Shown: piece by piece, positions 3 to 45,999 of the stretch
Layout of the letters: each line of letters opens with the position of its first letter
How positions within the stretch are numbered: position 1 is the stretch's first letter
IMG/VR virus record: IMGVR_UViG_3300032287_004484
Span: 124,001-188,000 of that record
Direction: 5' to 3' (one strand)
DNA: 64,000 bases
Notes under the pieces: generated by a model
What the model was told of the DNA's origin: nothing
What the model saw: the letters and a program-made list of their open reading frames with translations, nothing else
Database searches by the model: none
Translations under genes and position numbers: made by a program

Positions 3-254
3 GATTTCTTTTTTTTCATTCATAATGAAACAATCAAAAATACTATTAAGATATTTATCGTGATTTTTAACATGATTAAAGTTTTCAAAATCTGATATAA
101 GCGCAATATTATATTGATCTTTAAATTTTGTTAACCAATAAGTATAAGTTATATATGAATGTTTTGATGCGTTCCTTAAATTAAAGGGTGCGCCAAAACC
201 AACTACAATAGTTTTTTTATTTTGATTAAAAGAATTCTTTTTCTCAAATCTCAT
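3..254 (-). CDS. Partial ORF running off the window edge, possibly a glycosyltransferase N-terminus
   Basis: Not in the ORF track. ATG at 254 overlaps the upstream TGA (ATGA) and reads MRFEKKNSFNQNKKTIVVGFGAPFNLRN... open to the edge. Product call rests only on context. Confidence 0.6.
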   Translation of the reverse strand, partial: MRFEKKNSFNQNKKTIVVGFGAPFNLRNASKHSYITYTYWLTKFKDQYNIALISDFENFNHVKNHDKYLNSIFDCFIMNEKKEI

Positions 255-1246
255 TCTTTATTTTCCTTATTAAATTGTTTTTCAATCCATTTAAAAGTTT
301 TTTTCATTCCATCTTCTAATTTAGTTGAAGGTTCCCAATTTAATAATTCTTTAATTAAAGTATTATCACTATTACGACTCTTAACACCTTGTGGAGCACT
401 AACATTATAAATATAAGTTGAATCTATAATATCAGTTTTAGAAATTTTCATTGCTAAATCATGCAAATATTGAATAGTAACTCCTTGACTAGAACCTAAA
501 TTAACTGGACCTTGAATTTTATTATTTATTAATTTATGTATTCCAACAATTGCATCTTCTATGTACATAAAAGATCTTCGTTGTTTACCATCTCCCCAAA
601 TTTCAACATGATCTTTTTTCATATTAATATATTCAATAATTTTTCTAATTGAAGCAGCTGGAGCTTTTTCTTTTCCATCTTTCCAAGATCCATGAGGTCC
701 ATAAACATTATGAAAACGAGCAATCGTAACTGGAACTCCAAATTCTTTATTAAGATAACGATAAAGTTCTTCACAATATAATTTATTTAATCCATACATT
801 AAATCAGGATGTGCTGGCCACGCATCACTTTCTTTTAACATAATATCTTTAGAATCATCAGTTTGAAGAGAATCGTTATAGACACAAGCAGATGAAGAGA
901 AAAAAACATGTGGCTTATTCTCACTTTTTAAAATACTTTCTATTAAATTAATATGAATCTTTCCTGATAATCCAGTTAAAAGATGATTATGTTCGCAATA
1001 TCCGATTCCACCCATATCCTCAGCTAGGTTATAAATAATATTAACACCTTGAGTAACTGAGTCAGTAATTTGAGGATTGACCATATCTCCTTTTTTACCA
1101 TGATAATTATCAGCTTCTTTAAATCTTTGATACCATTCATTTTTTGGTTTTTTATCATAAGCTTTAACTTCGTAACCTAAATCTAGACAGCTTTTAACAA
1201 GATGTCCACCTATAAATCCACCTGCTCCGCAAACAGAAACTTTCAT
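251..1246 (-). CDS. NAD-dependent epimerase, GDP-mannose 3,5-epimerase-like
   Basis: GAGGFIG, DMGGIG, SSSACVY, YGLNK, RFHNVYGP, GKEKAPAA motifs; AAGGAG RBS. Confidence 0.85.
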   Translation of the reverse strand: MKVSVCGAGGFIGGHLVKSCLDLGYEVKAYDKKPKNEWYQRFKEADNYHGKKGDMVNPQITDSVTQGVNIIYNLAEDMGGIGYCEHNHLLTGLSGKIHINLIESILKSENKPHVFFSSSACVYNDSLQTDDSKDIMLKESDAWPAHPDLMYGLNKLYCEELYRYLNKEFGVPVTIARFHNVYGPHGSWKDGKEKAPAASIRKIIEYINMKKDHVEIWGDGKQRRSFMYIEDAIVGIHKLINNKIQGPVNLGSSQGVTIQYLHDLAMKISKTDIIDSTYIYNVSAPQGVKSRNSDNTLIKELLNWEPSTKLEDGMKKTFKWIEKQFNKENKE

Positions 1247-1329
1247 TTTTTCTCCTTATATTTCGTAAAAGTTATCACTATATTAAATAATTTTATTAAT
1301 ACTTTTTTCTTATGTTTATCTTTTTCATA

Positions 1330-1593
1330 TTATAATTTAGTTTTTTTTGAATTAAAAAAAGCACTAGACGTTGAATTAGAAGCGCTACTATTATAAGTTG
1401 GACTTGATGTAAATATATTATCAACATTTAAAAAAGGTTGTGAGGTTCCAGTATATGTACTTTTATTATTAACATATTGATCAACATAAGGCACTATTGG
1501 TTTTTCTTCTTCTACTAAAATACAAAATTCATCAACATTTATTAATTCATCTTTGAATAATTTAAGAAGAATTTTAATTTTTTCTTTATTCAT
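1330..1593 (-). CDS. Hypothetical protein
   Basis: 87 aa ORF overlapping the upstream gene end in an operon. Confidence 0.6.
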   Translation of the reverse strand: MNKEKIKILLKLFKDELINVDEFCILVEEEKPIVPYVDQYVNNKSTYTGTSQPFLNVDNIFTSSPTYNSSASNSTSSAFFNSKKTKL

Positions 1594-2542
1594 GTTTTTT
1601 CATCTCATTATTATAATATAAATATTTTATTTTAGTTATTTCTGGTAATAAATCGTGAATTGATTCTTTTTCTAGTTTGATAGTATTCTCATATCCCCAA
1701 ACTTCATTTTTTAAATCTTTAATTAAATCATGTTCATTTCTTTGCTGATGAACCGTAATTTTATTAAAAATTATTTTTTGTCTTAAATTAACAAGATTTT
1801 GTAATAAGTATGCTCCCCATATATCATCATATCTTCCAATATTACATAACATCATATATTTAGATATAAGACTTCTATGAATAAAAGTATTCTGAGAATT
1901 AAATGGAGTGAATTGATATGTTGTAAAAGGTCCATCATAAAAAGAATCGTATTCATTATATTTCCAATCAGGAGAATTAGATAATCTACAGATTGCCGAT
2001 ATATCTGGATCTCCACTCCATAAATCAGCTTGAATTAACGGGATAGTCTCTACTTTTTCTTCTAATTTAATTTTTCTTTTATTTAAAAGTTGTTCTGGAA
2101 AGCCACGGTGCCAGGTTCTTTCTGTACCTTTTGTATAAGTAAAAATAGGATCAAAAAAGAATTCATTTGTAGAGTAGCAAGGAACTTTTATTTTTTTACC
2201 AACTAAAACATTTTTTCCCCAATCTGGATATGGAATATTATCATCGTCAACAGTAGCAAAAATTTCGTATTTTTTAGGATCTTGTAGAGCATACCAAAAA
2301 CCAAAATTTCTTCTCTGAATATTATTCCAACCTAAAACATCACTTAATTCTTTATTATAGTGAATTTGAGAATATGAAGAAAGATATGTTACGTGTTTTT
2401 TATCTTTAAAAGTATCTTGAAATTCTTTATCAGGAGTTTTTAAATCACCTACTATAACTAAATCCCATCCTTCAATTTCACTAAATTTTATAAGAGCCTC
2501 TGTTGGCGGATTAATTGTTGTTGTAACTATTACTTTATTCAT
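1586..2542 (-). CDS. RGP/STELLO-like protein (UDP-arabinopyranose mutase / GT75-related)
   Basis: IVTTTIN, VGDLKTP, RRNFGF, VDDDN, FNSQNT, GRYDDIWG motifs; start moved to the ATG overlapping the upstream TGA. Confidence 0.75.
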   Translation of the reverse strand: MNKVIVTTTINPPTEALIKFSEIEGWDLVIVGDLKTPDKEFQDTFKDKKHVTYLSSYSQIHYNKELSDVLGWNNIQRRNFGFWYALQDPKKYEIFATVDDDNIPYPDWGKNVLVGKKIKVPCYSTNEFFFDPIFTYTKGTERTWHRGFPEQLLNKRKIKLEEKVETIPLIQADLWSGDPDISAICRLSNSPDWKYNEYDSFYDGPFTTYQFTPFNSQNTFIHRSLISKYMMLCNIGRYDDIWGAYLLQNLVNLRQKIIFNKITVHQQRNEHDLIKDLKNEVWGYENTIKLEKESIHDLLPEITKIKYLYYNNEMKKHE

Positions 2543-3831
2543 ATTCTTATTCCCCATTTTGTATTAGATAAATAACTATTAACTGTGTTAGTTAAAAAAG
2601 AACCATCTGGACCATCAGACATTTCGTTATAAAGTTCTTCTAATAATTTATATCTCATTTCTGGATTAGCTTCTAACTGTTCTATTTTTTGATACATTTC
2701 TTCTGGTTTTGAAACTCTTAAAAAAGATGGTACTGGCTGATTTTGTTGAACATCATAAGAATCAGGTATAAATGGTATTGTTCCTCTACTAGCAACAATC
2801 CAAGGTTTACTTGTAGCCCAACCATAATTAGTAGGCATAATTACTGTATATCTTGTATTTCTCATAATATCGTATAACTCATCAGTGCTTTTTACAAAAC
2901 CCTTAAATCTGGGATCACCTAAAGTTCTTGATTCATGCCAATAACCATAAATAGAATTTTCTTTATTAATGTCTGGATCTAAAACCCATCTTTTTAATTC
3001 CATATATCTAAAATCTTCTACTGGATTAAGAGCATCTGATTCTAATTGAGCTGAAATAACGGAGAATTTAAAAGTCTTTTCTCTTCTAAAATCACTATCA
3101 AGATTAACGTCAATTAAATCTATTTTTTCAATTCCATCATAAGTGCTATCCCAATTTTGTATTTCTTGAATAGGAGGTGGACCAAATTTAACAACTCTTT
3201 TCCAAACATGTTTTCCATTAGCTTGAGAAAGGAACCTTACTGGTGGATTAGTAATTTCTCTTGGATAGATTTGATGACGAAAGTGTCTTGGATCAGTACA
3301 GAGAATAAAATATGGAAATGGTTTATAATTAGAAAGAAAAGCACATAAAGGAGCAGTGTATCTAACATTCATTGCTCTTGGAACAGCGATTCCTTCTTGT
3401 CTTAATTTTGGCATATAATATGGAATAGAAACAGATGAATTAGAACCTTGACTCATAAAAAAGAATCCTAAATCTATTTCTAAATTAGCAGTCTTTAATC
3501 CATCAATTATTTTTTGACAACAACCCATTACTAAATCATAGTGTTCTGGTTTAGTAAAACTTTCTTTTGGATCTACAGGTGGCTTATATCCTATATCTCT
3601 TCCTAAAACGATCTTATTTTCTGGATCGATTTCTTTGACATGAGATAAATTTCTTTTTAAATCTTTTTCAGAAGAAGAAATTAAAATTATTTTTTTTACT
3701 GATTTTAATTTTAATAACCATAATAATGTTTTATAATAATCACTTTGTCCTGTATAACCTTGGTCACGACTACCAAACATCATCATTGAACCTAAAATAC
3801 CTAATACAACTGTTAAATCTTGATCTTTCAT
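2539..3831 (-). CDS. GT-B glycosyltransferase, T4 DNA beta-glucosyltransferase-like
   Basis: ILCTDPR, WATSKPW, IPFIPDSYD and FLRVSKPEEMYQKIEQL resemble the T4 BGT C-terminal half as recalled; GAGGAG RBS. Confidence 0.55.
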   Translation of the reverse strand: MKDQDLTVVLGILGSMMMFGSRDQGYTGQSDYYKTLLWLLKLKSVKKIILISSSEKDLKRNLSHVKEIDPENKIVLGRDIGYKPPVDPKESFTKPEHYDLVMGCCQKIIDGLKTANLEIDLGFFFMSQGSNSSVSIPYYMPKLRQEGIAVPRAMNVRYTAPLCAFLSNYKPFPYFILCTDPRHFRHQIYPREITNPPVRFLSQANGKHVWKRVVKFGPPPIQEIQNWDSTYDGIEKIDLIDVNLDSDFRREKTFKFSVISAQLESDALNPVEDFRYMELKRWVLDPDINKENSIYGYWHESRTLGDPRFKGFVKSTDELYDIMRNTRYTVIMPTNYGWATSKPWIVASRGTIPFIPDSYDVQQNQPVPSFLRVSKPEEMYQKIEQLEANPEMRYKLLEELYNEMSDGPDGSFLTNTVNSYLSNTKWGIRI

Positions 3832-3891
3832 ATGCTCCTCTACATTTATTATTATATTCTATTGTATATAAAAATAATAAAAAGGTTTAAA

Positions 3892-4285: not shown

Positions 4286-4498
4286 ATGTTTATAAAAGAA
4301 ATGACTATTGGTGAAGCGTTAGAGGTTCATCCCGAAGTTGGAATGGTTTTATCTGCTTACCACCTCGGTGGATGTTCGCATTGTTCTGTAAATGAGGTAG
4401 AAACTATCGAGCAAGTTTGTGAAGGATATGGAGTTGATGTTGATGAATTATTATGCTCTATGAATTCACTATTAAATGAAGATGAACAATTAGATTAA
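4286..4498 (+). CDS. DUF1858 / hybrid-cluster-associated redox disulfide domain protein
   Basis: MTIGEALEVHPE, GCSHC, ETIEQVCEGYGVD; AAGGAG RBS. Confidence 0.85.
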   Translation: MFIKEMTIGEALEVHPEVGMVLSAYHLGGCSHCSVNEVETIEQVCEGYGVDVDELLCSMNSLLNEDEQLD

Positions 4499-5038
4499 AA
4501 TTTCTTTTAATTGTTTTATAGTATCTTTACTATTAAGGTGGAGAATTGATTTTCCACCTTTTTCTTTAAATTCATCACAATTAGATTTTAAATCATCAAT
4601 TAAAATAGAATTTGAGTTAGCATATAGTTTTTTATCACTTTTTTTATTAACAAAATTAATATGATCAGTATCTAAGTATTGTGAAACATTATTTTTTTCT
4701 AACCAATTCTTTTTTTGTTGACTAAAATCTTCATAATTTTCTTTTCTAGCCGTAGAAGATAAAATTCCTAATTTAAAATTATATTCCTTTTTTAATTCAA
4801 AAATATTTTCAATTAATGAATTTTCTTCTAATACATCTAAAGTTTCAAATAATTTTTCTTTTTTAATTAAATCCCAAATTTTTTGTTTTTGATCTTCAGT
4901 TAAATTATGTTTTTTGATAATTTCTTTTTTCATTTTTTCAAAATCAGCAAGTACACCATCCATATCTAAATAAATGATGTACTGATCTAATTTTTTACTT
5001 TCTAAAATAGTATCTAAATATTTTTTAAAGATTGACAT
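4490..5038 (-). CDS. HAD-family 5'(3')-deoxyribonucleotidase-like protein with N-terminal leader
   Basis: YLDMDGVLADF, ILSS, KKNWL, ILIDD motifs; starts MSIFKKYLDTILE. Confidence 0.85.
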   Translation of the reverse strand: MSIFKKYLDTILESKKLDQYIIYLDMDGVLADFEKMKKEIIKKHNLTEDQKQKIWDLIKKEKLFETLDVLEENSLIENIFELKKEYNFKLGILSSTARKENYEDFSQQKKNWLEKNNVSQYLDTDHINFVNKKSDKKLYANSNSILIDDLKSNCDEFKEKGGKSILHLNSKDTIKQLKEILI

Positions 5039-5041
5039 CTA

Positions 5042-5743
5042 TTAAGAAAACTGTGAATATATTTTTTTAAATTTTTGTATTTCTTTATCGTTTAAATTTA
5101 ATTCTTGTAATACTCCATCTTCATTATAACTATTTAAAATCTCTTCTATAGAAAAATTATAATTATTAACGTTATCATCAATTTCCATAATAAGATCTTC
5201 TGCATTATCCCATTTTTTTCCAATAACATTTACAATATATTTTATAGTTATTCTTGGATCTTTTAAAATAGAATTTTCTAACGATTTTTTAAAATCAGAT
5301 TCAATTTTTTTCTTATTCTCATAAAAAGAATATAAATAAGATAAAGATATACTATTAGATATATCACTTTTTTGTTCATCAGTTAATGCTTCTTTTTGTT
5401 TAGCTATTTTATCTATATTTTGTTCATTAATTTTACTATCAATTGTTTGACTATGCACCATTTGAATTTGTTTTAAATATTCTTTATAATCTTTATTGGA
5501 CAAAGTTTTTGTTTTATTTTTTTCTTTATCTTCGTCTTGTAATTTTTTTAAAGATTCTTCATCAGAAAGTGGTTCAGATTCTGGTTGATACGGTGTTGTT
5601 TCAATTCTATAATCTTTATCACGATATTGCCATCCTGGCTTAACGGTTGGTTTATTTGATCCGCCCCTAGGAGCTCTTATATCTCTAATTTTATCCCCAA
5701 CTGCTTCTTGAATTATCGTTAAATATTTATTAAATAGTGACAT
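5042..5743 (-). CDS. Hypothetical protein with N-terminal leader (putative internal head protein)
   Basis: Starts MSLFNKYLTIIQE. Confidence 0.7.
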   Translation of the reverse strand: MSLFNKYLTIIQEAVGDKIRDIRAPRGGSNKPTVKPGWQYRDKDYRIETTPYQPESEPLSDEESLKKLQDEDKEKNKTKTLSNKDYKEYLKQIQMVHSQTIDSKINEQNIDKIAKQKEALTDEQKSDISNSISLSYLYSFYENKKKIESDFKKSLENSILKDPRITIKYIVNVIGKKWDNAEDLIMEIDDNVNNYNFSIEEILNSYNEDGVLQELNLNDKEIQKFKKIYSQFS

Positions 5744-5804: not shown

Positions 5805-6545
5805 TTATGGAGTCCAATCACCGCCCATTCTTTTTTTAATAGCTTTAACATAATTACTAGCTTCTAATAAAGAATCATAATTACCGCAATCAAACCAAGA
5901 ACAATCTATTTCTACAATATTTAGACGATCCTCATCAGCATATAAATTAGATAGTTCAGCAATTTCTGTTTCTCCTCTTGAAGATGGTTTTAGTGAATTA
6001 ACTTTTTCTAAAACATCACTTGGATAATAATAAAAACCAGGAACAGCTAAATTACCAATGTATTCTTTTGGTTTTTCAACTATTCTTCGAGTGTCTTTAT
6101 GTATTACTCCATATTGAGAAGGATCAAAGACTCTTAATCCAGTGATCATTGCTTTATTTTGAGAAATAGATTCTTCTAATTCTTTTTTTATTTGATGAGT
6201 AAAATTAAAAAATAAATTATCGCCTAAAATAAGGATAGCTCCATCTCCTTTTAACCATTTCTTTTCTTCTACTATTTTAAAAGCATCTGGTAGTCCAGTG
6301 GGTGTATCTTGAATGAAATAACGATCTATATTAGAACTAAATACATCTCTAAAATCAGAAAAAAAATCATTTTTACAAATAAGAGAAATTCTTTCTACTC
6401 CTAAAGCTTTTAAAACTTGAAATGGATACCACACCATTGGTTGATCATATACTGGTAATAATTGTTTTGATGTGTATTTTGTAAAATTAGAAAGACGAGT
6501 GCCATTTCCGCCGGCTAAAATAATTGCTGATAAATTGTGTTCCAT
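5805..6545 (-). CDS. rmlA: Glucose-1-phosphate thymidylyltransferase
   Basis: LAGGNGTRL, SKQLLPVYDQPM, LGDN, VEKP, SSRGETEI, WFDCG. Confidence 0.9.
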   Translation of the reverse strand: MEHNLSAIILAGGNGTRLSNFTKYTSKQLLPVYDQPMVWYPFQVLKALGVERISLICKNDFFSDFRDVFSSNIDRYFIQDTPTGLPDAFKIVEEKKWLKGDGAILILGDNLFFNFTHQIKKELEESISQNKAMITGLRVFDPSQYGVIHKDTRRIVEKPKEYIGNLAVPGFYYYPSDVLEKVNSLKPSSRGETEIAELSNLYADEDRLNIVEIDCSWFDCGNYDSLLEASNYVKAIKKRMGGDWTP

Positions 6546-6625: not shown

Positions 6626-6835
6626 ATGTCTCAATTTAATAAATATCTAAATATAGTGCAAGAGGCATCTTATGCTGATACAGAAAAAGCTAATGATCCG
6701 AAGCGTTTTGAAGATACTAGGAAGGCTTCTAAAGATAAGCGAGGATTTGTTAGAAACCCTAATAGTGAAACTAATTCTCAAAAAATAGAAAGATTAAAAA
6801 AAGAAGAAGAAGAAAAGAAAAAACAAAGAAGATAA
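6626..6835 (+). CDS. Small charged protein with N-terminal leader (putative internal head protein)
   Basis: Starts MSQFNKYLNIVQE; AAGGAG RBS; CATAAATATAT upstream. Confidence 0.75.
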   Translation: MSQFNKYLNIVQEASYADTEKANDPKRFEDTRKASKDKRGFVRNPNSETNSQKIERLKKEEEEKKKQRR

Positions 6836-6837
6836 TA

Positions 6838-7836
6838 TTACATCCATTCTTTATTTTTAAGAGTCCAATCTACTAAATGTTTCAACCCTTCTTCAAAAGA
6901 GAAGGGTGGAATCCAGCCTAAAGATCTTAAAAGAGCATCATTAATTCCATATTTTCGATCATATCCAGGACGAACTTTAGAATCGTCAATGGTATCTATT
7001 GGATAAACATTTATATTCATTATATTAGCAATTTTTTGAATTAATTCTAAATTATTAATTGAATCATTACCAGCAACATTAAATTTAAGAGGAGTTTCAA
7101 GAAAATTTTTTTTCTCGTAAAAAACTGGATCTACTTTATTATCTATAAATATAAGAGCATCACTTAAATTTCTACAATCTAAATAAACTCTTGATCCTAC
7201 TTTTCCACCAGAAGTATATACTGGTATAGTTTTACCTTGACTAAGGTATGAAATTGTTTTAGGTATCATTTTTTCTGGATTCTGCCTCTTACCGAACATG
7301 TTCATGCAATGAATTATAATACTTGGTATTCTATATGTTCTCCAATAAGAAAAGATTATATTATCTTGAGCTGCTTTACTAGCACTATAAGGATTACTAG
7401 GGTGATACTCCCACCCTTCTCGATGGAGATCATCTCCAAAGACTTCTCCATAAACCTCATCAGTAGATAGATGAATAAATTTAGATGGATTTATTTTTCT
7501 TACAAAATCTAAAACGCTTAGTATTAATTGAACATTATTATTAATAATATCATCTGGAGATTCGACTGATGTTGCTACACTAGAATCACTAGCAATAGAA
7601 AATACAGTATCTATGTGTCCTATTTTAGAAATTAAAGTTTCACTAAATGGAACTCTTAAATCATGTCTAAAATTAGTATAATTAGGATGATTATTAAAAA
7701 TTAATCTTTGAGAATCACCTTTTCTAGTTAGTGAATCAATTCCTATAACTTGGTATCCTCTACTGAGGAGATCTTCAACTAAGTGATGTCCAACAAAACC
7801 AGAACTACCAGTAACTAAAACTTTTTTTATATCCAT
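6838..7836 (-). CDS. rmlB: dTDP-glucose 4,6-dehydratase
   Basis: GSSGFVG, STDEVYG, PSNPYSASK, QNPEKMIP, RPGYDRKY. Confidence 0.88.
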   Translation of the reverse strand: MDIKKVLVTGSSGFVGHHLVEDLLSRGYQVIGIDSLTRKGDSQRLIFNNHPNYTNFRHDLRVPFSETLISKIGHIDTVFSIASDSSVATSVESPDDIINNNVQLILSVLDFVRKINPSKFIHLSTDEVYGEVFGDDLHREGWEYHPSNPYSASKAAQDNIIFSYWRTYRIPSIIIHCMNMFGKRQNPEKMIPKTISYLSQGKTIPVYTSGGKVGSRVYLDCRNLSDALIFIDNKVDPVFYEKKNFLETPLKFNVAGNDSINNLELIQKIANIMNINVYPIDTIDDSKVRPGYDRKYGINDALLRSLGWIPPFSFEEGLKHLVDWTLKNKEWM

Positions 7837-9167: not shown

Positions 9168-9722
9168 TTAATGATTATTCAAATATTCTTGTAATGATGG
9201 TGCATTTCTATCTTTATTAGAAATCGTTATTTCTCTTATATTAACTGGTGGCATTCTTTTAATAAAGACTTCACTCTGTAAAAGAGGAATACCATTTATT
9301 ATTCTTTCATTTTCGGGAACTCTTGGAGATGATACAGAATATAAAACTCTATTATCATTTTCAAGAGTAAAAAATCCATGAGCACAGCCTTCTGGTACAT
9401 ATACTGATTGTAGAGTCGAATCTGTTAAAAAAACGACTTCTGTTTCTAAATAAGATGGTGATCCTTTTCTAAGATCAATAAAAAAATCATAAATTGATCC
9501 TTTCATTACTGTCACCAATTTTGCTTGTGCAAAATTACCTTCTTGAAAGTGTAAACCTCTAAGAACATGTTTTTTAGATTGAGAAATATTTTGCTGAATA
9601 AAGTGTTTAAAGTATTTATCTTTAAAATCATCTTGTAGATATTCAGAGAAAAAGCCTCTATCATCTTCAAAACTTTTATGGTCTAATAAAAAAGAATCTT
9701 GAATTTTTAAGTTAGTTATCAT
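9168..9722 (-). CDS. rmlC: dTDP-4-dehydrorhamnose 3,5-epimerase
   Basis: FEDDRGFFSE, VLRGLHFQ, QAKLV, DLRKGSPSY, GCAHGF. Confidence 0.9.
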   Translation of the reverse strand: MITNLKIQDSFLLDHKSFEDDRGFFSEYLQDDFKDKYFKHFIQQNISQSKKHVLRGLHFQEGNFAQAKLVTVMKGSIYDFFIDLRKGSPSYLETEVVFLTDSTLQSVYVPEGCAHGFFTLENDNRVLYSVSSPRVPENERIINGIPLLQSEVFIKRMPPVNIREITISNKDRNAPSLQEYLNNH

Positions 9723-10425: not shown

Positions 10426-11799
10426 ATGAAAAATAAACTTGTAATTTTTGATTTAGATGGAGTATTAATTGATTCTAGAGATTTACATTATTACTCATTA
10501 AATAATGCTTTAAGTAAAATTGATAATAAATATATAATATCTAAAGATGAACATCTATCTATATTTGACGGATTAAGTACAACTAAAAAATTAAATTTAT
10601 TAGCTGAAATTAAAAAACTACCTAAAGAGTATCATCAGATCATTTGGGAAGATAAACAAAAAGCAACAATAGAATTATTAAAAAAAATTAATAAAAACAA
10701 AATCGCAATTTCTATAATTAATGAATTAAAAAAAATAGGATGGAAAGTAGCGGTTGCTTCTAATAGTATTAGAGAAACTTTAAGAGTATCTTTACATAGC
10801 ATTGGAATATTACATTTAATAGATTATATGGTTAGTAATGAAGATGTAATTAATCATAAACCTCATCCAGAAATGTATTGGAAGTGTATGTTATCTTTAA
10901 ATGCTTTACCATCTAATACTTTAATAGTTGAAGATTCACATATAGGAAGGCAAGCTGCATTATCTTCTGGAGCTAATCTTTATGCTATTAAAGATTCTTA
11001 TGAATTAAATTATAAAACATTTTTTAATGAACTTGAAAAGTTTGATAATAAAAAACAAAAAATAAATATACCTTGGAGTAATAAAAAAATGAACGTATTA
11101 ATCCCAATGGCTGGGGCTGGATCTAGATTTTCTCAAGCAGGATATACTTTTCCAAAACCATTAATTGAAGTTAATGGAAAACCAATGATTCAAAAAATAG
11201 TTGAAAATCTTAATATAGACGCTCATTATATTTTTATAGTACAAAAAGAACATTATGACAAATATAATTTAAAGCAATTATTAAATTTAATATCTCAAGA
11301 CTGTGATATAATTATTGTAGATTCTATTACTGAAGGAGCAGCTTGCACTGCTTTATTAGCAAAAGAAATAATAAACGATGATCAACCTCTTTTAATTGCT
11401 AATTCTGATCAAATTATGGATTGGAATTCTAATGAATGTTTATATGCTTTTTCTAATGATAATATTGATGGAGGAATTTTAGTTTTTGAATCAACACACC
11501 CTAAATGGTCTTTTGTTAAATTAGATTCTAATAATTTTGTAATAGAAGTTGCAGAAAAAAATCCTATTTCAAACATAGCTACTACAGGAGTTTATTATTG
11601 GTCAAAAGGTTCTCATTTTGTTAAATACGCAGAACAAATGATTACTAATAATATTAGAGTTAATAATGAATTTTATATATGTCCTATTTTTAATGAAGCT
11701 ATTAAAGATAATAAAAAAATTAAAATAAAATATGTTGATAAAATGTGGGGAATAGGTACCCCAGAAGATTTAAAATATTATTTGGAAAATAATAAATGA
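10426..11799 (+). CDS. HAD phosphatase fused to sugar nucleotidyltransferase
   Basis: N-half FDLDGVL, KPHPEMY, VEDS; C-half IPMAGAGSRF, PKPLIEV, ANSDQ, EFYICP, GTPEDL. Confidence 0.85.
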   Translation: MKNKLVIFDLDGVLIDSRDLHYYSLNNALSKIDNKYIISKDEHLSIFDGLSTTKKLNLLAEIKKLPKEYHQIIWEDKQKATIELLKKINKNKIAISIINELKKIGWKVAVASNSIRETLRVSLHSIGILHLIDYMVSNEDVINHKPHPEMYWKCMLSLNALPSNTLIVEDSHIGRQAALSSGANLYAIKDSYELNYKTFFNELEKFDNKKQKINIPWSNKKMNVLIPMAGAGSRFSQAGYTFPKPLIEVNGKPMIQKIVENLNIDAHYIFIVQKEHYDKYNLKQLLNLISQDCDIIIVDSITEGAACTALLAKEIINDDQPLLIANSDQIMDWNSNECLYAFSNDNIDGGILVFESTHPKWSFVKLDSNNFVIEVAEKNPISNIATTGVYYWSKGSHFVKYAEQMITNNIRVNNEFYICPIFNEAIKDNKKIKIKYVDKMWGIGTPEDLKYYLENNK

Positions 11800-22427: not shown

Positions 22428-22787
22428 TTAAACAAAAAATATCCAATTATGTTTTGGTCTATTATGTGTATAATAAAAATCTTTTTCGTGAAAATAAGCT
22501 TCTTTTTCAAATGGATTTTTATAATATGCCTCTAAATAAGGATTTTTAAAATTAAAACTTATTAATTCTTTAATTATGTTAATTAGCATAAAATAAACAT
22601 ATAAAAAATAAAATCCTATTATCAATAATTCTTTTTGCTGTTCAATATGAATTAATTCATGATTAACTATTATTTCAATTTCTGGATCTTTTTCTAAAGT
22701 TTTTAAAATAAAAATAAAAGGATATAAAGTTATACCGCTAGCAAAACCAAATGTAATGTACTTAACTAAATTTGTAAATATTATCAT
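22428..22787 (-). CDS. Small membrane-associated HExxH metallopeptidase-like protein
   Basis: GITLYPFIF, NHELIHIEQ, NPFEKEAY. Confidence 0.75.
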   Translation of the reverse strand: MIIFTNLVKYITFGFASGITLYPFIFILKTLEKDPEIEIIVNHELIHIEQQKELLIIGFYFLYVYFMLINIIKELISFNFKNPYLEAYYKNPFEKEAYFHEKDFYYTHNRPKHNWIFFV

Positions 22788-22874
22788 ATATAAATATTTT
22801 TATATTTATACTATTATTTTTAATAAAAATAATAGTATTTAATATCTTTTTTTAAAGCTTTTGATAAATTATCT

Positions 22875-23468
22875 CTAATTAATTAATTTTATAGTTATAA
22901 TGCAATCTTTATCGACACTAATTATAAAACCTTTATACTGCGTTTTTTTTATTTTATCAAATCTTTTTTGATTTTTATCGTTAAAATCGTCATATTTTAT
23001 TTTTGAAGAAAAATTTGATTCTACTAATTCTATAATATTTTTAAAAATTATTTTAAAATTTTTATTAATCATTGCTTGTCTATAAGATAAAGTTTTTTCA
23101 TATCCTTCTTTATCTTTAAAAAAATTAGGCGATTTTTTTACTATTATATTTGCGCCAAAAGTATTAAAAAACTCAACAAATTTTACTTGCTCTTCATCTC
23201 CTTTTATATACATTTCACCATCAGTTAAAAGATATAACGATTTTAAATCTATTCTTTTATATGAATTATCTTTTATTTTAATTTTTGTTCTTGCTGAAAC
23301 AAGCGATTTTTTTATGCCTATTTTTTCTCCTAAATCCTCAAGTTTTCCTACTACTTCTGCTCCTATTTCTTGAACTGCTGCTTTAGCAAGTCTATATCCT
23401 TTCCAAGCTTCATCATAATTTTGTTTTTCTTCTTGAATTATTTCTAAATAATCATAAAAATTTTTCAT
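22875..23468 (-). CDS. Hypothetical protein with N-terminal leader (putative internal head protein)
   Basis: Starts MKNFYDYLEIIQE; GAGG RBS; CATAAATATAT upstream. Confidence 0.75.
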   Translation of the reverse strand: MKNFYDYLEIIQEEKQNYDEAWKGYRLAKAAVQEIGAEVVGKLEDLGEKIGIKKSLVSARTKIKIKDNSYKRIDLKSLYLLTDGEMYIKGDEEQVKFVEFFNTFGANIIVKKSPNFFKDKEGYEKTLSYRQAMINKNFKIIFKNIIELVESNFSSKIKYDDFNDKNQKRFDKIKKTQYKGFIISVDKDCIITIKLIN

Positions 23469-23527
23469 TTTTTTTATTTACCTCTTAAATATATTTATGT
23501 TATATTTTTTTTTCAATTTAGCAAATT

Positions 23528-23929
23528 TTAAAAAAATATATTATCCCATTCTTTAGGTAATAAGGATATATCTATTTTTCTAACTTTAATTGGTAAATTA
23601 TTTAATTTAGCTTTTTTTAATCTATGATGTCCATCTATAATTATTTTTTCTCCAGTAGAATCTTTAGTTATAATTATTATTGGATAATCTAAATCAGAAG
23701 CTTCTACTCTTAGTAAAGTATCTTCATCTGTTTTTTCACTATGAATAGAATTATATTTTTCAGACGGTTCTTCTATTATAGGAATGTTATTTTCTTTTAG
23801 TTTTTTTTGTATATCAGACATTGTAACTTGATTAATTTCATCTGACCAGTATTCATCTATAAGATTAGGATTTTTTATTAAAGATGTAGCATCATTAATA
23901 ATTTTTAAATATTCATATAGTTTAATCAC
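23528..23929 (-). CDS. ParB/Srx N-terminal-domain protein with leader-like N-terminus
   Basis: SDLDYPIII, IIDGHHRL; GTG start, MIKLYEYLKIIND. Confidence 0.75.
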   Translation of the reverse strand: MIKLYEYLKIINDATSLIKNPNLIDEYWSDEINQVTMSDIQKKLKENNIPIIEEPSEKYNSIHSEKTDEDTLLRVEASDLDYPIIIITKDSTGEKIIIDGHHRLKKAKLNNLPIKVRKIDISLLPKEWDNIFF

Positions 23930-24036
23930 ACTATATATTTAGTTGATAAAATAATTAATTGTGATTTATTTTAAAAATTTTTTGTGTATATTTATGTTTA
24001 TTATTATTAAAAATAAAAATAGAGGTACAAATTAAT

Positions 24037-24285
24037 ATGAAAAATTTTCATGATTATCTAGAAATAATTCAAGAAAAAACTGCGAATATTCCAAGCAGAG
24101 GATCAGAGGATCATCTTAAGATGATCGCACAAAAAATTTATAATATGGTTAAATCTGATGGAATGGCTACATGGAATTCAACTTCAAGATCAGAAGTATA
24201 TGATAATAAAAAATACTATGGAGTACAAAAGTTATCGGAAGATCAGATAATTGAAGTTTTAGGTATGGTTGATAAAATGTTTTAA
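24037..24285 (+). CDS. Small protein with N-terminal leader (putative internal head protein)
   Basis: Starts MKNFHDYLEIIQE; GAGG RBS. Confidence 0.75.
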   Translation: MKNFHDYLEIIQEKTANIPSRGSEDHLKMIAQKIYNMVKSDGMATWNSTSRSEVYDNKKYYGVQKLSEDQIIEVLGMVDKMF

Positions 24286-24293
24286 TAAATATA

Positions 24294-24722
24294 TTAAAGT
24301 ATTTTTTGATATTTTATTTTTCCTTTTTGAAATATAAGATCGGTATAATTAGAATTATAATCTTCTATATAATTAACTTCTTTTATACCACTATGAACAA
24401 TTAGCGCTGCACACTGAGCGCATGGTTTAGTTGTGCAGTACATTACTCCACCTTTAATAGATATTCCTAAATAAGCAGCTGTTGCGATTGCTCCTTGTTC
24501 AGCGTGCTGACAAAGAGCTTTTTCAAGATTAGTTCCACTGATATTATTAGAATTACATCTTGTACAATCATCTGTAGAACATTTTTTAGGAGGACTATTC
24601 CATCCTTCTGCAACGATTCTATCTTCAATCGTAATGATTGCGCCAACTTTACGGGACAAACATTCGCTTTGTTCAGCAATTCGTAAAACTATGTCTTTAA
24701 AGAATCTATTTTTATCTTTCAT
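24294..24722 (-). CDS. dCMP deaminase
   Basis: SECLSRKVGA, HAEQ, PCAQC. Confidence 0.9.
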   Translation of the reverse strand: MKDKNRFFKDIVLRIAEQSECLSRKVGAIITIEDRIVAEGWNSPPKKCSTDDCTRCNSNNISGTNLEKALCQHAEQGAIATAAYLGISIKGGVMYCTTKPCAQCAALIVHSGIKEVNYIEDYNSNYTDLIFQKGKIKYQKIL

Positions 24723-24793
24723 AATTATAATAAATATATTAAAGTTATATTATAAATGTTTAAAAAATAATAATATAACTTTATTAATTTATT

Positions 24794-25126
24794 TTAATTA
24801 AAATTCTTAGCCATGAAATCTATAAATTTGTTTCTTGGTGTTGCTCCAATAATTTTATCTACTACAACACCATTGTCAAGGACTATAAAAGTAGGTATAG
24901 AATTTACTGAAAAACCTCTTAAAATTGAAACTAAATCACCATTATCAGCATCTAATTTAAGAATTTTAATTTCTTTATTACCTTTAATCATCATGTCATC
25001 TATATCATAAATTATTGGAGACATCATTTTACATGGAGAACACCATTCTGCCCAAATATCTAATAAAACTTTATTATTAGATATTTGTTCTAAATATTCT
25101 TCGTTATTTTGTATGCTTAATATCAA
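24794..25126 (-). CDS. trxA: Thioredoxin
   Basis: WAEWCSPCK, SIPTF. Confidence 0.9.
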   Translation of the reverse strand: MILSIQNNEEYLEQISNNKVLLDIWAEWCSPCKMMSPIIYDIDDMMIKGNKEIKILKLDADNGDLVSILRGFSVNSIPTFIVLDNGVVVDKIIGATPRNKFIDFMAKNFN

Positions 25127-26979: not shown

Positions 26980-27047
26980 TATTTTTTCCTTTTTGATTGA
27001 TATGATTAAAAATATCTTTTATTGTAATACAACTAAAAATTGTAAAA

Positions 27048-27545
27048 TTAATTATATATCATAAAATTATTTATGATTATTCCTTCTCCACGTTGAAGAT
27101 AGAATCCATAGTTAAAGAAATAATTTTTTTCTTTTTTTTCTACTTCATCTGGATTAAAAGTTTCAATTATGTCTACGTCTCCAACTAACCAATCGTGTTC
27201 AAATTTATCATATGATGCTATAGAATCATCTAAACTTATATCTTCAATTTTAACTGGTGATAAAATACCATCAGAATCTAATCTTAGAAATGAACCTTCG
27301 CTTTCAAGGAACTGAATAATTATTTGATTATCGTCACTTGTTTTAATTATATAAGCTTTATTTTCTATTTTATTAAGAACTTGTTTTGGTATTAATTTTA
27401 ATTCTACATCTTTATAAAAGAAATTAATTGATGATCCCCATTTAAAATGTAATGCTTTTAAACTTTCTTCTCTTTTACGCTTTATTATCTCTTCTTTATT
27501 TTCATTAATAAAGAACATTGTTTTCGATAAACATCTTACAATCAT
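27048..27545 (-). CDS. Free-standing degenerate HINT/intein-like domain protein
   Basis: CL at residues 5-6, YIIKTSDDNQIII, VKIEDISLDDSI, C-terminal IIINNFMIYN-stop. Confidence 0.55.
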   Translation of the reverse strand: MIVRCLSKTMFFINENKEEIIKRKREESLKALHFKWGSSINFFYKDVELKLIPKQVLNKIENKAYIIKTSDDNQIIIQFLESEGSFLRLDSDGILSPVKIEDISLDDSIASYDKFEHDWLVGDVDIIETFNPDEVEKKEKNYFFNYGFYLQRGEGIIINNFMIYN

Positions 27546-27904
27546 TTATAACTCCAAAAATCTTTTTTTAGTGTGCTAATTAGAAAATTGCTTAATTCAT
27601 TATCTGCCATTGTTAATCGTCTAATAGTTGTCATCTCATCTTGATTAGCAACATCTTTTTGAAAATCAGTAGGAAGAAGATTATAAAACTCATAAAATGA
27701 TATTGAATTAAAAAAATAATATTTAGAATAATTATTCCCCATGAAATAATAAATACATTCTGGAATAATAGTGTTTTCTTTTTTATAAGAAAAGAATTTT
27801 TTTAAAGTCGGTGGATTGACATTTCTTTCATTACAAAACTTGATTATGTAATTAATACTATACTTTGTTTCTTGTTTGATTTTACTAAGAGAAAAATTAT
27901 CCAT
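27542..27904 (-). CDS. Hypothetical protein
   Basis: 120 aa ORF coupled (ATGA) to the HINT-like gene. Confidence 0.65.
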   Translation of the reverse strand: MDNFSLSKIKQETKYSINYIIKFCNERNVNPPTLKKFFSYKKENTIIPECIYYFMGNNYSKYYFFNSISFYEFYNLLPTDFQKDVANQDEMTTIRRLTMADNELSNFLISTLKKDFWSYK

Positions 27905-27949
27905 GCTATTATAATTTATTTAATATTTTAATAAGTGTTTAAAACTTTT

Positions 27950-45998: not shown

Positions 45999-45999
45999 A

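What the first reader, a model, noticed from the sequence alone, without database searches (positions are those of the whole stretch)
3..3831. Candidate DNA sugar-hypermodification operon: BGT-like transferase + RGP/STELLO-like protein + GDP-mannose 3,5-epimerase
Seen: one minus-strand operon behind TAAACC-N17-TACAAT (3889-3861), with ATGA coupling at 2539-2542 and 251-254. It encodes a 430 aa GT-B-like protein, an RGP/STELLO-like protein (DDD, GRYDDIW), a small ORF, a GME-like epimerase keeping the SSAC Cys and EKAP Lys, and a partial ORF. Established: T4 BGT glucosylates hydroxymethylcytosine in DNA, plant RGPs interconvert UDP-arabinopyranose and -furanose, and GME makes GDP-L-galactose/L-gulose. 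Inference: the phage makes an unusual, possibly L-configured or furanose, NDP-sugar and transfers it to its DNA to block restriction/CRISPR nucleases. The BGT resemblance is from memory of the C-terminal half only.
Basis: partly seen in the sequence, partly recalled or inferred. Interest (0 to 1): 0.8.

Follow-up and report, generated by a model that had tools for sequence, protein, structure and literature searches.

The report
Phage DNA-glycosylation operon with L-sugar pathway
A giant freshwater phage carries a tightly packed gene set that most likely makes an unusual sugar donor (GDP-L-galactose in its five-membered ring form) and attaches it to the phage's own DNA, a new sugar variant of a known anti-restriction strategy.

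Summary
All ORFs, both ATGA overlaps and the quoted motifs are present. The promoter-like site is no better than chance.

Gene identities:
- 251-1246: a GDP-mannose 3,5-epimerase (PDB 2c59, E 1e-73) with all catalytic residues kept.
- 1586-2542: a divergent GT75 NDP-pyranose mutase homologue (MtdL, E 1e-15).
- 2539-3831: a GT-B transferase (AF2 pLDDT 96). Its family profile hits T4 beta-glucosyltransferase (E 5e-9, C-terminal half only) but not Pfam's BGT model.
- The partial ORF at the left edge is probably a second glycosyltransferase. A C5-cytosine-methyltransferase-like gene follows just outside the window.

Context is the strongest evidence. In 80 IMG/VR loci of this GT family, 78 have the same methyltransferase-like gene downstream. 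Sixty have a T4-gp42-type dCMP hydroxymethylase upstream. A 34%-identical relative has GT-mutase-epimerase-MT together with a gp42-like gene.

This phage therefore carries a variant of a widespread, uncharacterised hmC-glycosylation module with a GDP-L-galactofuranose pathway inserted.

The main weakness is that no hydroxymethylase or TET was found in the 97 kb (33%) of this genome inspected. The phage also has other sugar islands, so virion or cell-surface glycosylation remains a rival.

Verdict: new variant of a known kind.

The parts
2539..3831 (-). 430-aa GT-B glycosyltransferase. Member of a phage family distantly related to T4 beta-glucosyltransferase in its donor-binding half. Predicted DNA (5-hmC) glycosyltransferase.
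   Evidence: No Pfam, PHROG or NCBIfam hit on its own. AF2 model has pLDDT 96.1 and a two-Rossmann GT-B fold. Family profile against PDB: T4 BGT at E 5e-9 is the only significant hit. hhalign to T4 BGT: 94.9%. Foldseek: T4 BGT is among the top PDB hits, and the best viral hit is annotated 'DNA beta-glucosyltransferase', TM 0.80. R275 and K342 align with BGT R195 and R269.
1586..2542 (-). 318-aa GT75-like protein (the longest ORF starts at 2557). Predicted Mn-dependent NDP-pyranose/furanose mutase.
   Evidence: PDB MtdL (7xpr/7yua), E 1e-15 over residues 71-286. These residues are invariant in 123 family members: DDDN 104-107, R151 (MtdL R159), D185 (D195), S221/Q222, R242 (R257), D245 (D260) and R273. 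MtdL H287 is Q271 and D87 is I80. It lies adjacent to a GME-like gene in L003 and L006 (HMM-confirmed) and one gene from an untyped SDR epimerase in the P0116 contig.
1330..1593 (-). 87-aa ORF of unknown function with a low-complexity C-terminus. Not a conserved part of the module.
   Evidence: No family hits. Replaced by 100-aa and 52-aa ORFs in relative L004 and absent in L003.
251..1246 (-). 331-aa GDP-mannose 3,5-epimerase.
   Evidence: PDB 2c59 (Arabidopsis GME), E 1e-73, aligned end to end. Kept residues: GAGGFIG at 7, C121 (At C145), Y151/K155 (Y174/K178), K194 (K217) and R291 (R306). The roles of these residues are taken from PMC6678494.
1..254 (-). First 84 codons of a 369-aa gene that runs off the window. 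Probably a second GT-B glycosyltransferase.
   Evidence: Full gene at L002:13578-14687. Weak Exostosin_GT47 hit, E 0.004. hhalign to the GT family's donor-binding motif: 95%. Protein-atlas neighbours are viral and Glyco_trans_1_2 / T4-Gluco-transf clusters. Homologues sit between the GT and the MT-like gene in Pseudoalteromonas phage XG4 and in 7 IMG/VR loci. The AF2 model was too poor to use.
3861..3889 (-). Promoter-like TAAACC-N17-TACAAT, with a GAGGAG ribosome-binding site before the ATG at 3831.
   Evidence: The sequence is present. Such sites are not enriched over shuffles.
10426..11799 (+). HAD (beta-phosphoglucomutase-like) + NDP-sugar pyrophosphorylase fusion. A possible, unproven phage source of the NDP-hexose precursor.
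   Evidence: Pfam HAD_2 + NTP_transferase. PDB 4evw, an NDP-sugar pyrophosphorylase, at E 3e-18, plus beta-PGM hits. Specificity cannot be assigned.

Best explanation
The genes form one co-directional, overlapping block: GT - GT75-like mutase - orf87 - GME - second GT. Just outside the window come a C5-cytosine-methyltransferase-like gene and a small HNH/GmrSD_C-like nuclease.

Proposed pathway:
1. GME converts GDP-D-mannose (from the host or phage-made) to GDP-L-galactose, with GDP-L-gulose as a by-product. Enzyme identity is shown by homology and conserved catalytic residues. Activity is inferred.
2. The GT75-like enzyme contracts the ring to give GDP-L-galactofuranose, as MtdL does downstream of a GME in A201A biosynthesis. 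This is inferred. The catalytic Arg/Asp set is kept, but two residues important in MtdL differ.
3. The 430-aa GT-B enzyme transfers this sugar to a hydroxylated cytosine in phage DNA, most likely 5-hydroxymethylcytosine. The second GT may add a further sugar. This is inferred from family context, not shown for this phage.
4. The bulky sugar shields the DNA from restriction and CRISPR nucleases. This rests on established knowledge of T4 and RB69, not on anything tested here.

The operon is a donor-switch variant of a widespread module in uncultured phages: gp42-like dCMP hydroxymethylase ... GT - (GT2) - MT-like.
For: Enzyme identities:
- GME.
- GT75 homology and conserved catalytic residues. 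MtdL chemistry: PMC9937993. GME upstream of the L-galactofuranose unit of A201A: PMC6678494.
- GT: GT-B fold and BGT relationship.

Synteny:
- GT-mutase-GME-GT2-MT is conserved in close relatives (L004, L005, L008).
- Contig L003 has proteins 29-49% identical to this phage's (GT 34%, mutase 36%, GME 49%, MT 29%). There the GT-mutase-GME-MT block (no GT2) is followed by dCMP deaminase, thymidylate synthase, DHFR and a 246-aa protein closest to T4 dCMP hydroxymethylase (1b49, E 1e-37).

Family context:
- Of 80 IMG/VR loci with this GT family, 78 have the MT-like gene downstream. 60 have a gp42-like gene carrying the T4 MRSND...NDY signature, with Asp at both diagnostic positions.
- The same module occurs in Pseudoalteromonas phage XG4.
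- In Enterococcus phage Planchet the family member sits beside a thymidylate synthase/hydroxymethylase, a dUTPase and two more GTs.
- The P0128 contig has a TS-like gene, dUTPase, ThyX and a DNA polymerase around the GT.

Precedents: GT+epimerase DNA-glycosylation clusters (10.1101/2023.12.21.572611) and furanosyl DNA sugars (PMC13326640).
Against: - No gp42-like, thymidylate-synthase-family or Tet_JBP gene was found in the window or in the 97 kb of this genome inspected (record 93,210-190,564). In most relatives the gene lies within 8 kb of the GT.
- The GT's acceptor-binding N-terminal half does not align with BGT. None of 110 members hits Pfam's BGT model.
- The BGT ribose-binding Glu (E272) is Ile in this clade.
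- The GT75-like family has Gln where MtdL has its Mn-binding His287, and Ile where MtdL has the essential Asp87.
- The same phage carries RmlA/B/C-like genes, GT2s, an acyltransferase and an aminotransferase. Part of this set lies inside the structural module.
- GT75-like genes with GME-like or untyped SDR epimerase neighbours also occur in multi-GT glycan-type clusters of other phages.
- No nucleoside chemistry and no expression data are available. No RNA run was listed.
Confidence: 0.55

Rival explanations
1. The operon glycosylates something other than DNA, such as virion proteins, a phage-directed surface glycan, or host LPS/capsule. It would be part of this phage's large sugar-metabolism repertoire. 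GME and the mutase would still make GDP-L-galactose(furanose), but the GTs would act on protein or lipid-linked acceptors.
For: - The operon sits in a 12-kb island with RmlA/B/C-like genes, an acyltransferase, a GT2, a HAD-pyrophosphorylase fusion and a methyltransferase.
- A second sugar island (GT2, hexapeptide transferase, DegT, two AspH-like oxygenases) lies inside the structural module.
- GT75-like genes with GME-like or untyped SDR epimerase neighbours occur in clusters with GT10/GT11/GT6/GT25 and FkbM methyltransferases in other phages.
- 66 of 110 GT family members hit the generic CgeB-type Glyco_trans_1_2 domain, and none hits the BGT model.
- No base-hydroxylating gene was found nearby in this phage.
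Against: This particular GT family is coupled to a C5-cytosine-MT-like gene (78/80 loci) and a gp42-type dCMP hydroxymethylase (60/80), and it lies among nucleotide-metabolism and replication genes. In this phage it keeps the GT2 and MT-like partners directly downstream. T4 BGT is the only significant PDB sequence match of the family profile.
Confidence: 0.2
2. DNA is the target, but the GT75-like protein is not a mutase. It would act as a third, GT-A-type (RGP-like, self- or DNA-glycosylating) transferase. The sugar on DNA would then be L-galactopyranose or L-gulose from GME, or a host UDP-sugar, rather than a furanose.
For: - GT75 proteins are formally glycosyltransferases with a GT-A domain and a DXD motif (PMC9937993).
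- This family replaces MtdL's Mn-binding His287 with Gln and its essential Asp87 with Ile.
- Known phage DNA-glycosylation clusters often encode several sequential GTs.
Against: The residues that carry out mutase chemistry in MtdL are invariant in 123 family members: R159, D195 and D260, plus S228/Q229 and R257. The gene lies next to or near an SDR epimerase in all four independent contexts seen; GME-like identity was confirmed by HMM in the three with sequence (window clade, L003, L006). This mirrors the GME-to-MtdL order of the A201A pathway.
Confidence: 0.15
3. DNA is the target, but the hydroxyl handle is made after replication. The adjacent C5-MT-like enzyme would methylate cytosines in a sequence motif, and an unidentified oxidase would convert 5mC to 5hmC, as in the MT/5mYOX/GT clusters. 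Only a subset of cytosines would then be glycosylated.
For: - The MT-like gene is directly downstream and keeps the catalytic motifs PC, ENxP, QxRxR and QNVP.
- Its architecture resembles the published MT + 5mYOX + GT (+ epimerase) clusters.
- No gp42-like gene was found near the operon in this clade.
- Two 2OG-oxygenase genes (Asp_Arg_Hydrox) are present in the window.
Against: No Tet_JBP-family gene was found in any ORF of 100 aa or more in the window, nor in the precomputed Pfam lists of the flanks. In the wider family the MT-like gene co-occurs with a pre-replicative gp42-type hydroxymethylase, not with an oxidase. The AspH-like oxygenases sit in a different sugar cluster 40 kb away.
Confidence: 0.1

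Closest known systems
T4 gene 42 / beta-glucosyltransferase system (GT63): pre-replicative 5-hmC followed by glucosylation on DNA
   Same: The GT-B fold and a homologous donor-binding half (profile E 5e-9; hhalign 95%). The phosphate-binding R195 and R269 equivalents are kept. The GT family is linked to a gp42-type dCMP hydroxymethylase with the T4 active-site signature, and the gene sits in a T4-superfamily phage (gp23, gp17, gp21-like protease).
   Different: The N-terminal acceptor domain does not align with BGT. No member hits Pfam's BGT model. The proteins are about 80 residues longer than BGT. The family is coupled to a C5-MT-like gene that T4 lacks. In this phage the donor is predicted to be a GDP-L-sugar rather than UDP-glucose, and no gene 42 homologue has been found so far.
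Phage C5-MT / 5mYOX(TET) / GT biosynthetic clusters, especially 'subclass II' GT + sugar epimerase (Pyle et al., bioRxiv 10.1101/2023.12.21.572611; Burke et al., PMC8256090)
   Same: A GT, a partner SDR epimerase, a second GT and a C5-cytosine MT-like gene lie side by side. The published logic is that the epimerase supplies the correct NDP-sugar for a DNA GT.
   Different: No 5mYOX was found. The family's usual partner is a thymidylate-synthase-type hydroxymethylase. The epimerase here is a 3,5-epimerase that makes an L-sugar, and a ring-contracting mutase follows it. GDP and mutase are not mentioned in that paper.
A201A / hygromycin A sugar pathways: GDP-mannose 3,5-epimerase followed by the GT75 mutases MtdL / Hyg20, giving GDP-L-galactofuranose / GDP-L-fucofuranose
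   Same: The same two enzyme families occur next to each other. The catalytic Arg, the two Asp, Ser/Gln, Arg and the DDD motif are conserved (PMC9937993; PMC6678494).
   Different: Those pathways are actinomycete antibiotic pathways with a small-molecule acceptor. The phage family has Gln for His287, Ile for Asp87 and Lys for the guanine-contacting Asn42. Both activity and nucleotide preference are therefore unproven.
Arabinofuranosyl-5-hydroxycytosine of RB69/DLP3 and the proposed UDP-galactofuranose route in Pootjesviridae (Lee et al., NAR 2026, PMC13326640)
   Same: Phage DNA decorated with furanose sugars. The phage encodes its own NDP-sugar pathway, including (proposed) an NDP-sugar mutase.
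   Different: Those systems use UDP-D-sugars, an FAD-type UDP-galactopyranose mutase and a D169N thymidylate-synthase homologue that makes 5-hydroxycytosine. Here the relatives' enzymes keep Asp at that position (the hydroxymethylase type), the mutase is the metal-dependent GT75 type, and the sugar would be L-configured.

Membership tests
GDP-mannose 3,5-epimerase (extended SDR) | Full-length sequence similarity to characterised GMEs | tested here: met
   PDB 2c59, E 1e-73, residues 1-329 aligned to 30-346. The next SDR class scores E 5e-22.
GDP-mannose 3,5-epimerase (extended SDR) | GxxGxxG NAD motif, the YxxxK pair, catalytic Cys and Lys acid/base, and the conserved Arg (At C145, Y174, K178, K217, R306) | tested here: met
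   GAGGFIG at 7, C121, Y151/K155, K194 and R291. Roles are from PMC6678494.
GDP-mannose 3,5-epimerase (extended SDR) | Conversion of GDP-Man to GDP-L-Gal / GDP-L-Gul | not testable with these tools
   Needs an enzyme assay.
GT75 NDP-pyranose mutase (MtdL / Hyg20 / plant UAM-RGP) | Sequence homology to a solved GT75 mutase | tested here: met
   MtdL 7xpr/7yua, E 1e-15, residues 71-286. No hit to any Pfam model at E <= 0.01.
GT75 NDP-pyranose mutase (MtdL / Hyg20 / plant UAM-RGP) | DDD (DXD) motif and the catalytic/autoglycosylated Arg with its two Asp partners (MtdL D109-111, R159, D195, D260) | tested here: met
   D104-D106, R151, D185 and D245 are invariant or nearly so in 123 sequences.
GT75 NDP-pyranose mutase (MtdL / Hyg20 / plant UAM-RGP) | Mn-coordinating His287 and sugar-binding Asp87 (D87N/S abolishes MtdL activity) | tested here: not met
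   These align to Q271 (invariant Gln) and I80 (Ile/Val). Plant RGP2 has Ser at the Asp87 position, so this site varies with substrate.
GT75 NDP-pyranose mutase (MtdL / Hyg20 / plant UAM-RGP) | GDP rather than UDP preference (MtdL T13, S86 not Asp, N42) | tested here: inconclusive
   Thr is kept at 13. Position 79 is N/S/C/T, never Asp. The N42 equivalent is Lys. The N-terminus was aligned by eye only.
T4 beta-glucosyltransferase family (GT63, Pfam PF09198) | GT-B two-Rossmann fold | tested here: met
   AF2 pLDDT 96.1. Foldseek TM to BGT chains is 0.59-0.66, normalised by target length. Other GT-B enzymes score similarly.
T4 beta-glucosyltransferase family (GT63, Pfam PF09198) | Match to the family's own profile over the whole protein | tested here: not met
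   0 of 110 family members hit PF09198 at E <= 0.01. 66 hit PF13524 and 16 hit GT10. The profile-to-BGT match covers only BGT 126-334.
T4 beta-glucosyltransferase family (GT63, Pfam PF09198) | UDP-binding residues R191/R195/R269/E272 and the catalytic Asp100. Residue roles are recalled from the BGT structure papers, not re-read here. | tested here: inconclusive
   R275 aligns with R195 and K342 with R269. E272 aligns with I345 in this clade, although it is Glu in 107/135 of the family. The Asp100 region does not align. D120 and D180 are the family's conserved acidic candidates.
T4 beta-glucosyltransferase family (GT63, Pfam PF09198) | Acceptor is 5-hmC in duplex DNA | not testable with these tools
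   Only context supports this: 60/80 loci have a gp42-like gene and 78/80 a C5-MT-like gene.
Phage MT / 5mYOX / GT hypermodification cluster | A C5-cytosine methyltransferase adjacent to the GT | tested here: met
   PF00145, E 5e-20, 11 nt downstream of the second GT. Motifs PC, ENxP, QxRxR and QNVP are kept.
Phage MT / 5mYOX / GT hypermodification cluster | A TET/JBP-type 5-methylpyrimidine dioxygenase in the cluster | tested here: not met
   No Tet_JBP hit in any window ORF of 100 aa or more, nor in the precomputed Pfam lists for record 93,210-190,564. The remaining 67% of the genome was not seen.
gp42-like hydroxymethylase ... GT - (GT2) - MT-like module of uncultured phages (defined here) | GT family member followed by the MT-like gene, optionally with the GT2 homologue between them | tested here: met
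   Window phage: GT, then mutase/orf87/GME, then GT2, then MT-like. 78/80 IMG/VR loci and phage XG4 show the GT-to-MT order.
gp42-like hydroxymethylase ... GT - (GT2) - MT-like module of uncultured phages (defined here) | gp42-type dCMP hydroxymethylase within about 8 kb upstream | tested here: not met
   Absent from the window, L002, L004, L005, L032, L033 and L034.

The most novel reading that the evidence does not exclude
The virion DNA of this freshwater jumbo phage carries L-galactofuranosyl-5-hydroxymethylcytosine. This would be the first L-configured hexose, the first GDP-linked donor and the first GT75-type (metal-dependent, flavin-free) mutase known in nucleic-acid modification. In addition, the C5-methyltransferase-like protein that accompanies this GT family in hundreds of uncultured phages, although they already make hmC before replication, may not be an ordinary methylase. 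It could be a new accessory enzyme of DNA glycosylation, for example one that flips the base or processes hmC.
Probability: 0.3. Interest if true: 0.85.

Novelty: new variant of a known kind. Interest (0 to 1): 0.68.

Why it matters
Glycosylated cytosines are a major way for phages to escape restriction enzymes and CRISPR nucleases. They are also a source of enzymes for epigenetic sequencing and DNA labelling. All characterised cases use UDP-D-sugars.

An operon that feeds a GDP-L-galactose-derived furanose to a DNA glycosyltransferase would widen the known chemistry of natural DNA. It would provide a GT with a new donor specificity. It would also show that phages diversify the sugar by inserting donor-pathway cassettes into a fixed hydroxymethylase-GT-MT scaffold.

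The scaffold itself has at least 289 IMG/VR loci and only one cultured carrier. It appears uncharacterised, and it is directly testable in Pseudoalteromonas phage vB_Psh_XG4.

Tried and rejected
1. **Single-sequence searches of the 430-aa protein.** Pfam, PHROGs, NCBIfam and PDB gave nothing. Only the family profile reached BGT.

2. **Looking for the base-hydroxylating gene in this genome.**
   - I walked the source scaffold with the look-up of encoding contigs out to record 93,210-190,564 and found only structural, ligase and RNaseH genes. One look-up failed because the ORF start differed.
   - Searches seeded with the relative's gp42-like gene did not list this genome's contig. These were the protein database top 120, IMG/VR by protein, IMG/VR by alignment and an AT-biased MRSND..G..ND DNA pattern.

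3. **The search for related loci with broad GT alignments.** A subclade alignment worked.

4. **AF2 of the 369-aa second GT.** With 7 sequences it gave pLDDT 43, so no fold search was run on it.

5. **Promoter evidence.** Sigma-70-like sites are at chance level. The T4 late motif TATAAATA is not systematically upstream of genes here. No timing inference was made.

6. **Donor inference from the BGT E272-equivalent.** The Ile substitution is confined to the window clade. It is not shared by the L003 relative, which has the same GME/mutase pair, so it is not diagnostic.

7. **Isoelectric point as a DNA-binding proxy.** Values of 7.6, 8.8, 5.3 and 9.1 across homologues are uninformative.

8. **Sequencing runs.** Only assembled DNA contigs from freshwater metagenomes were found, and no RNA run was listed. 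Read laying would therefore show neither expression nor modification, and I did not use it.

9. **The Zhu et al. 2017 A201A paper.** Not held. The pathway is cited through PMC9937993 and PMC6678494.

Full report
**Observation.**
- 2539-3831: 430 aa.
- 1586-2557: gene call from the ATG at 2542, 318 aa.
- 1330-1593: 87 aa.
- 251-1246: 331 aa.
- An open frame leaves the window at its left edge.

The minus strand reads ATGA at 2539-2542 and at 251-254. TAAACC-17 nt-TACAAT lies at 3889-3861, followed by GAGGAG and the ATG. The DDD, GRYDDIW, SSAC and EKAP motifs are in the translations. Only the promoter lacks weight: sigma-70-like sites are no more frequent than in shuffled sequence, 49 against 55 +/- 8.

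**The genome.** The window has 26% G+C and no tRNA or Rfam hit.
- It is an exact part of a 290,572-bp metagenomic scaffold, also held in IMG/VR as a 290,274-bp viral genome.
- Window position x corresponds to record position 166,436 - x.
- Several markers make it a distant T4-superfamily jumbo phage: a gp17-type terminase, a gp23 capsid protein, a Peptidase_S77 prohead protease, a T4 baseplate protein, a class II ribonucleotide reductase, thioredoxin and dCMP deaminase.
- Freshwater and lake metagenomes from several studies hold it.

**The genes.**
- *251-1246* is a GDP-mannose 3,5-epimerase. It aligns end to end with the Arabidopsis enzyme (2c59, E 1e-73), far ahead of any other SDR. It keeps the NAD motif, the Tyr/Lys pair, the catalytic Cys and Lys, and the supporting Arg (C121, Y151/K155, K194, R291; residue roles from PMC6678494).
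- *1586-2542* matches no Pfam model but matches the crystal structures of MtdL at E 1e-15. MtdL is the GT75 Mn-dependent mutase that converts GDP-L-galactopyranose to GDP-L-galactofuranose (PMC9937993).
  - In an alignment of 123 relatives, the DDD motif, the nucleophilic Arg (R151 = MtdL R159), both partner Asp, Ser/Gln, R242 and R273 are invariant or nearly so.
  - However, MtdL's Mn-binding His287 corresponds to an invariant Gln, and the essential Asp87 to Ile.
  - This is therefore a distinct GT75-like subfamily. Mutase activity is likely but unproven.
- *2539-3831* has no single-sequence match to any family or structure.
  - An exhaustive profile search found 356 cluster representatives.
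  - With 135 of them, AlphaFold gives a confident GT-B model, pLDDT 96.
  - The family profile's only significant PDB hit is T4 beta-glucosyltransferase (E 5e-9, BGT residues 149-334). hhalign gives 95% probability.
  - By fold, BGT is among the best PDB matches, but other GT-B enzymes score alike.
  - The best viral model is annotated 'DNA beta-glucosyltransferase' (TM 0.80).
  - None of 110 members hits Pfam's BGT model. 66 hit the generic Glyco_trans_1_2 domain, and 16 hit the GT10 fucosyltransferase C-terminal domain. From my own knowledge, GT10 enzymes use GDP-L-fucose as donor.
That half binds the donor and says nothing about the acceptor.
- *The partial ORF* is the start of a 369-aa protein that is probably a second GT-B enzyme. 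Its AlphaFold model was too poor to use.
- *Beyond the window*, the same strand continues after 11 nt with a 402-aa C5-cytosine-methyltransferase-like gene. A 179-aa GmrSD_C/HNH-like nuclease, two AdoMet-decarboxylase genes and the terminase follow.

**Comparative context.** This is the decisive evidence.
- The order GT-mutase-GME-GT2-MT is kept in close relatives, including a 398-kb contig.
- Contig L003 has proteins 29-49% identical to this phage's (GT 34%, mutase 36%, GME 49%, MT 29%). It has GT-mutase-GME-MT followed by dCMP deaminase, a true thymidylate synthase, DHFR and a dUTPase-family gene. It also has a 246-aa protein whose best structural relative is T4 dCMP hydroxymethylase (E 1e-37).
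- Another family member lies between a TS-like gene and a dUTPase, close to DNA polymerase, topoisomerase and ThyX genes.
- In Enterococcus phage Planchet the family member sits beside a 'thymidylate synthase/pyrimidine hydroxymethylase', kinases, a dUTPase and two more GTs.
- Pseudoalteromonas phage vB_Psh_XG4 is the only cultured carrier I found. It has gp42-like, GT, a GT2 homologue and the MT-like gene within 6.6 kb.
- In 80 IMG/VR loci retrieved with a subclade alignment (of at least 289 matches), 78 have the MT-like gene directly or closely downstream of the GT. 60 have a gp42-like gene 1-8 kb upstream. Many loci that lack one are contigs truncated close to the GT.
- All these gp42-like proteins carry MRSND...NDY. 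That means Asp both at the position that specifies cytosine and at the position whose Asn variant marks 5-hydroxycytosine synthases (criterion from PMC13326640).
- The GT family therefore belongs to a widespread module: dCMP hydroxymethylase ... GT - (GT2) - MT-like.
- The window phage and L003 are variants in which a GT75-like mutase and a GME have been added next to the GT. Eight other loci instead have a different SDR epimerase directly upstream of the GT. This suggests that the donor sugar is the variable element.

**What is missing.** No thymidylate-synthase-family or Tet_JBP gene occurs in the window or in the 97,355 bp (33%) of the scaffold whose gene lists I could read. Searches seeded with the relative's gp42-like gene did not return this genome, but they were truncated. 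Whether this phage makes hmC is therefore open.

**Mechanism proposed.**
1. GDP-D-mannose is converted by GME to GDP-L-galactose.
2. The GT75-like mutase converts this to GDP-L-galactofuranose.
3. The 430-aa GT transfers the sugar to 5-hydroxymethylcytosine in DNA, and the second GT may extend it.

The enzyme identities are shown by homology. The activities, the acceptor and the biological role are inferred. The GME-to-GT75 order copies the A201A route to L-galactofuranose.

The role of the MT-like enzyme is unexplained. It keeps the catalytic PC, ENxP, QxRxR and QNVP motifs and has an unusual PLIGG motif I. A cytosine-5 methylase should have little substrate in hmC DNA.

**Rivals.**
- *Non-DNA glycosylation.* The phage has RmlA/B/C-like genes, GT2s, acyl- and aminotransferases, partly inside the structural module. 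GT75-like genes with GME-like or untyped SDR epimerase neighbours also occur in multi-GT clusters of other phages.
- *The GT75-like protein is a third transferase rather than a mutase.*
- *A post-replicative MT-plus-oxidase route to the hydroxyl group.*

**Comparison and novelty.**
- DNA glycosylation on hmC is classical. GT+epimerase+MT clusters (10.1101/2023.12.21.572611) and furanosyl DNA sugars with phage-encoded UDP-sugar pathways (PMC13326640) are recent precedents.
- A GDP-mannose 3,5-epimerase and a GT75 mutase in such a cluster are not mentioned in the two phage DNA-glycosylation papers I term-searched, and a full-text search for galactofuranose, GT75 and phage returned no paper describing them.
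- This makes the operon a new variant of a known kind. The widely conserved GT-MT-like pair is an additional open question.
- My confidence in the full best explanation is about 0.55. That the GT family acts on DNA is about 0.7. That this operon makes an L-galactose-derived furanose donor is about 0.55.

Noticed in passing
window 4490-5038 (-), 5042-5743 (-), 6626-6835 (+); also L004 2888-3367 and 7999-8592: Three neighbouring ORFs begin with the same peptide, MS[ILQ]F[NK]KYL..[IV][ILV][QL]E. They are an NT5C/HAD-like 182-aa protein, a 233-aa protein and a 69-aa protein. The peptide looks like a T4-type capsid-targeting sequence ending in a prohead-protease (L/I)xE site, and the phage has a gp21-type protease at 62573-63226. 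They may be packaged and injected internal proteins, as T4 IPI* is against GmrSD.
   Followed up: partly
window 42091-47115 (with 5805-6545, 6838-7836, 9168-9722): A second, very AT-rich sugar island lies inside the structural module. It has a GT2-like gene, a hexapeptide acyltransferase, two Asp_Arg_Hydrox 2OG oxygenases and a DegT aminotransferase. Together with the RmlA/B/C-like genes near the operon, it could make an N-acylated 4-amino-4,6-dideoxyhexose. The target is unknown.
   Followed up: partly
L002 14699-15907 (11 nt beyond the window's left-edge gene); L119-L198; L117 5363-6580: A C5-cytosine-methyltransferase-like family (motifs PLIGG, PCAGLS, ENAP, QxRxR, QNVP) follows this GT family in 78 of 80 IMG/VR loci. 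It co-occurs with a gp42-type dCMP hydroxymethylase. Its function in phages expected to have hmC DNA is unexplained. Besides phage XG4, the only cultured relatives found are in the cyanophage S-TIM5 group.
   Followed up: partly
L002 15916-16455 and 16709-17435 (just left of the window): A 179-aa GmrSD_C/HNH-like nuclease sits directly after the MT-like gene. Two tandem AdoMet-decarboxylase (PF02675) genes lie before the terminase. This arrangement is conserved in the 398-kb relative L004.
   Followed up: no
L006 837-16244; contig of P0116 (no DNA held): Homologues of the GT75-like protein lie next to or near an SDR epimerase (GME-like by HMM in L006; only Pfam Epimerase/GDP_Man_Dehyd on the P0116 contig, whose DNA was not held) in other phage contigs. 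They sit inside large clusters with GT10/GT11 (fucosyltransferase-type), GT6, GT25, GT2 and GT4 enzymes and FkbM methyltransferases. GDP-L-sugar furanose cassettes therefore seem common in phage glycan clusters. The family has about 3,900 database relatives and no Pfam model.
   Followed up: partly
window 22428-28369: A nucleotide-metabolism block holds dCMP deaminase (24294-24722), thioredoxin (24794-25126), a class II ribonucleotide reductase (25123-26979) and several unassigned small ORFs. No thymidylate synthase is present.
   Followed up: no
L033 18989-19888 and 16775-17983 (about 8 kb right of the window): A di-haem cytochrome c peroxidase/MauG-like gene and a GIY-YIG homing endonuclease lie next to the gp23 major capsid gene.
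   Followed up: no
alignment A6 (GT family): 16 of 110 family members hit the C-terminal domain of GT10 fucosyltransferases, and a fucosyltransferase is the second PDB hit of the family profile (E 0.003). From my own knowledge, GT10 enzymes use GDP-L-fucose, so this may hint that part of the family uses GDP-L-sugars.
   Followed up: no
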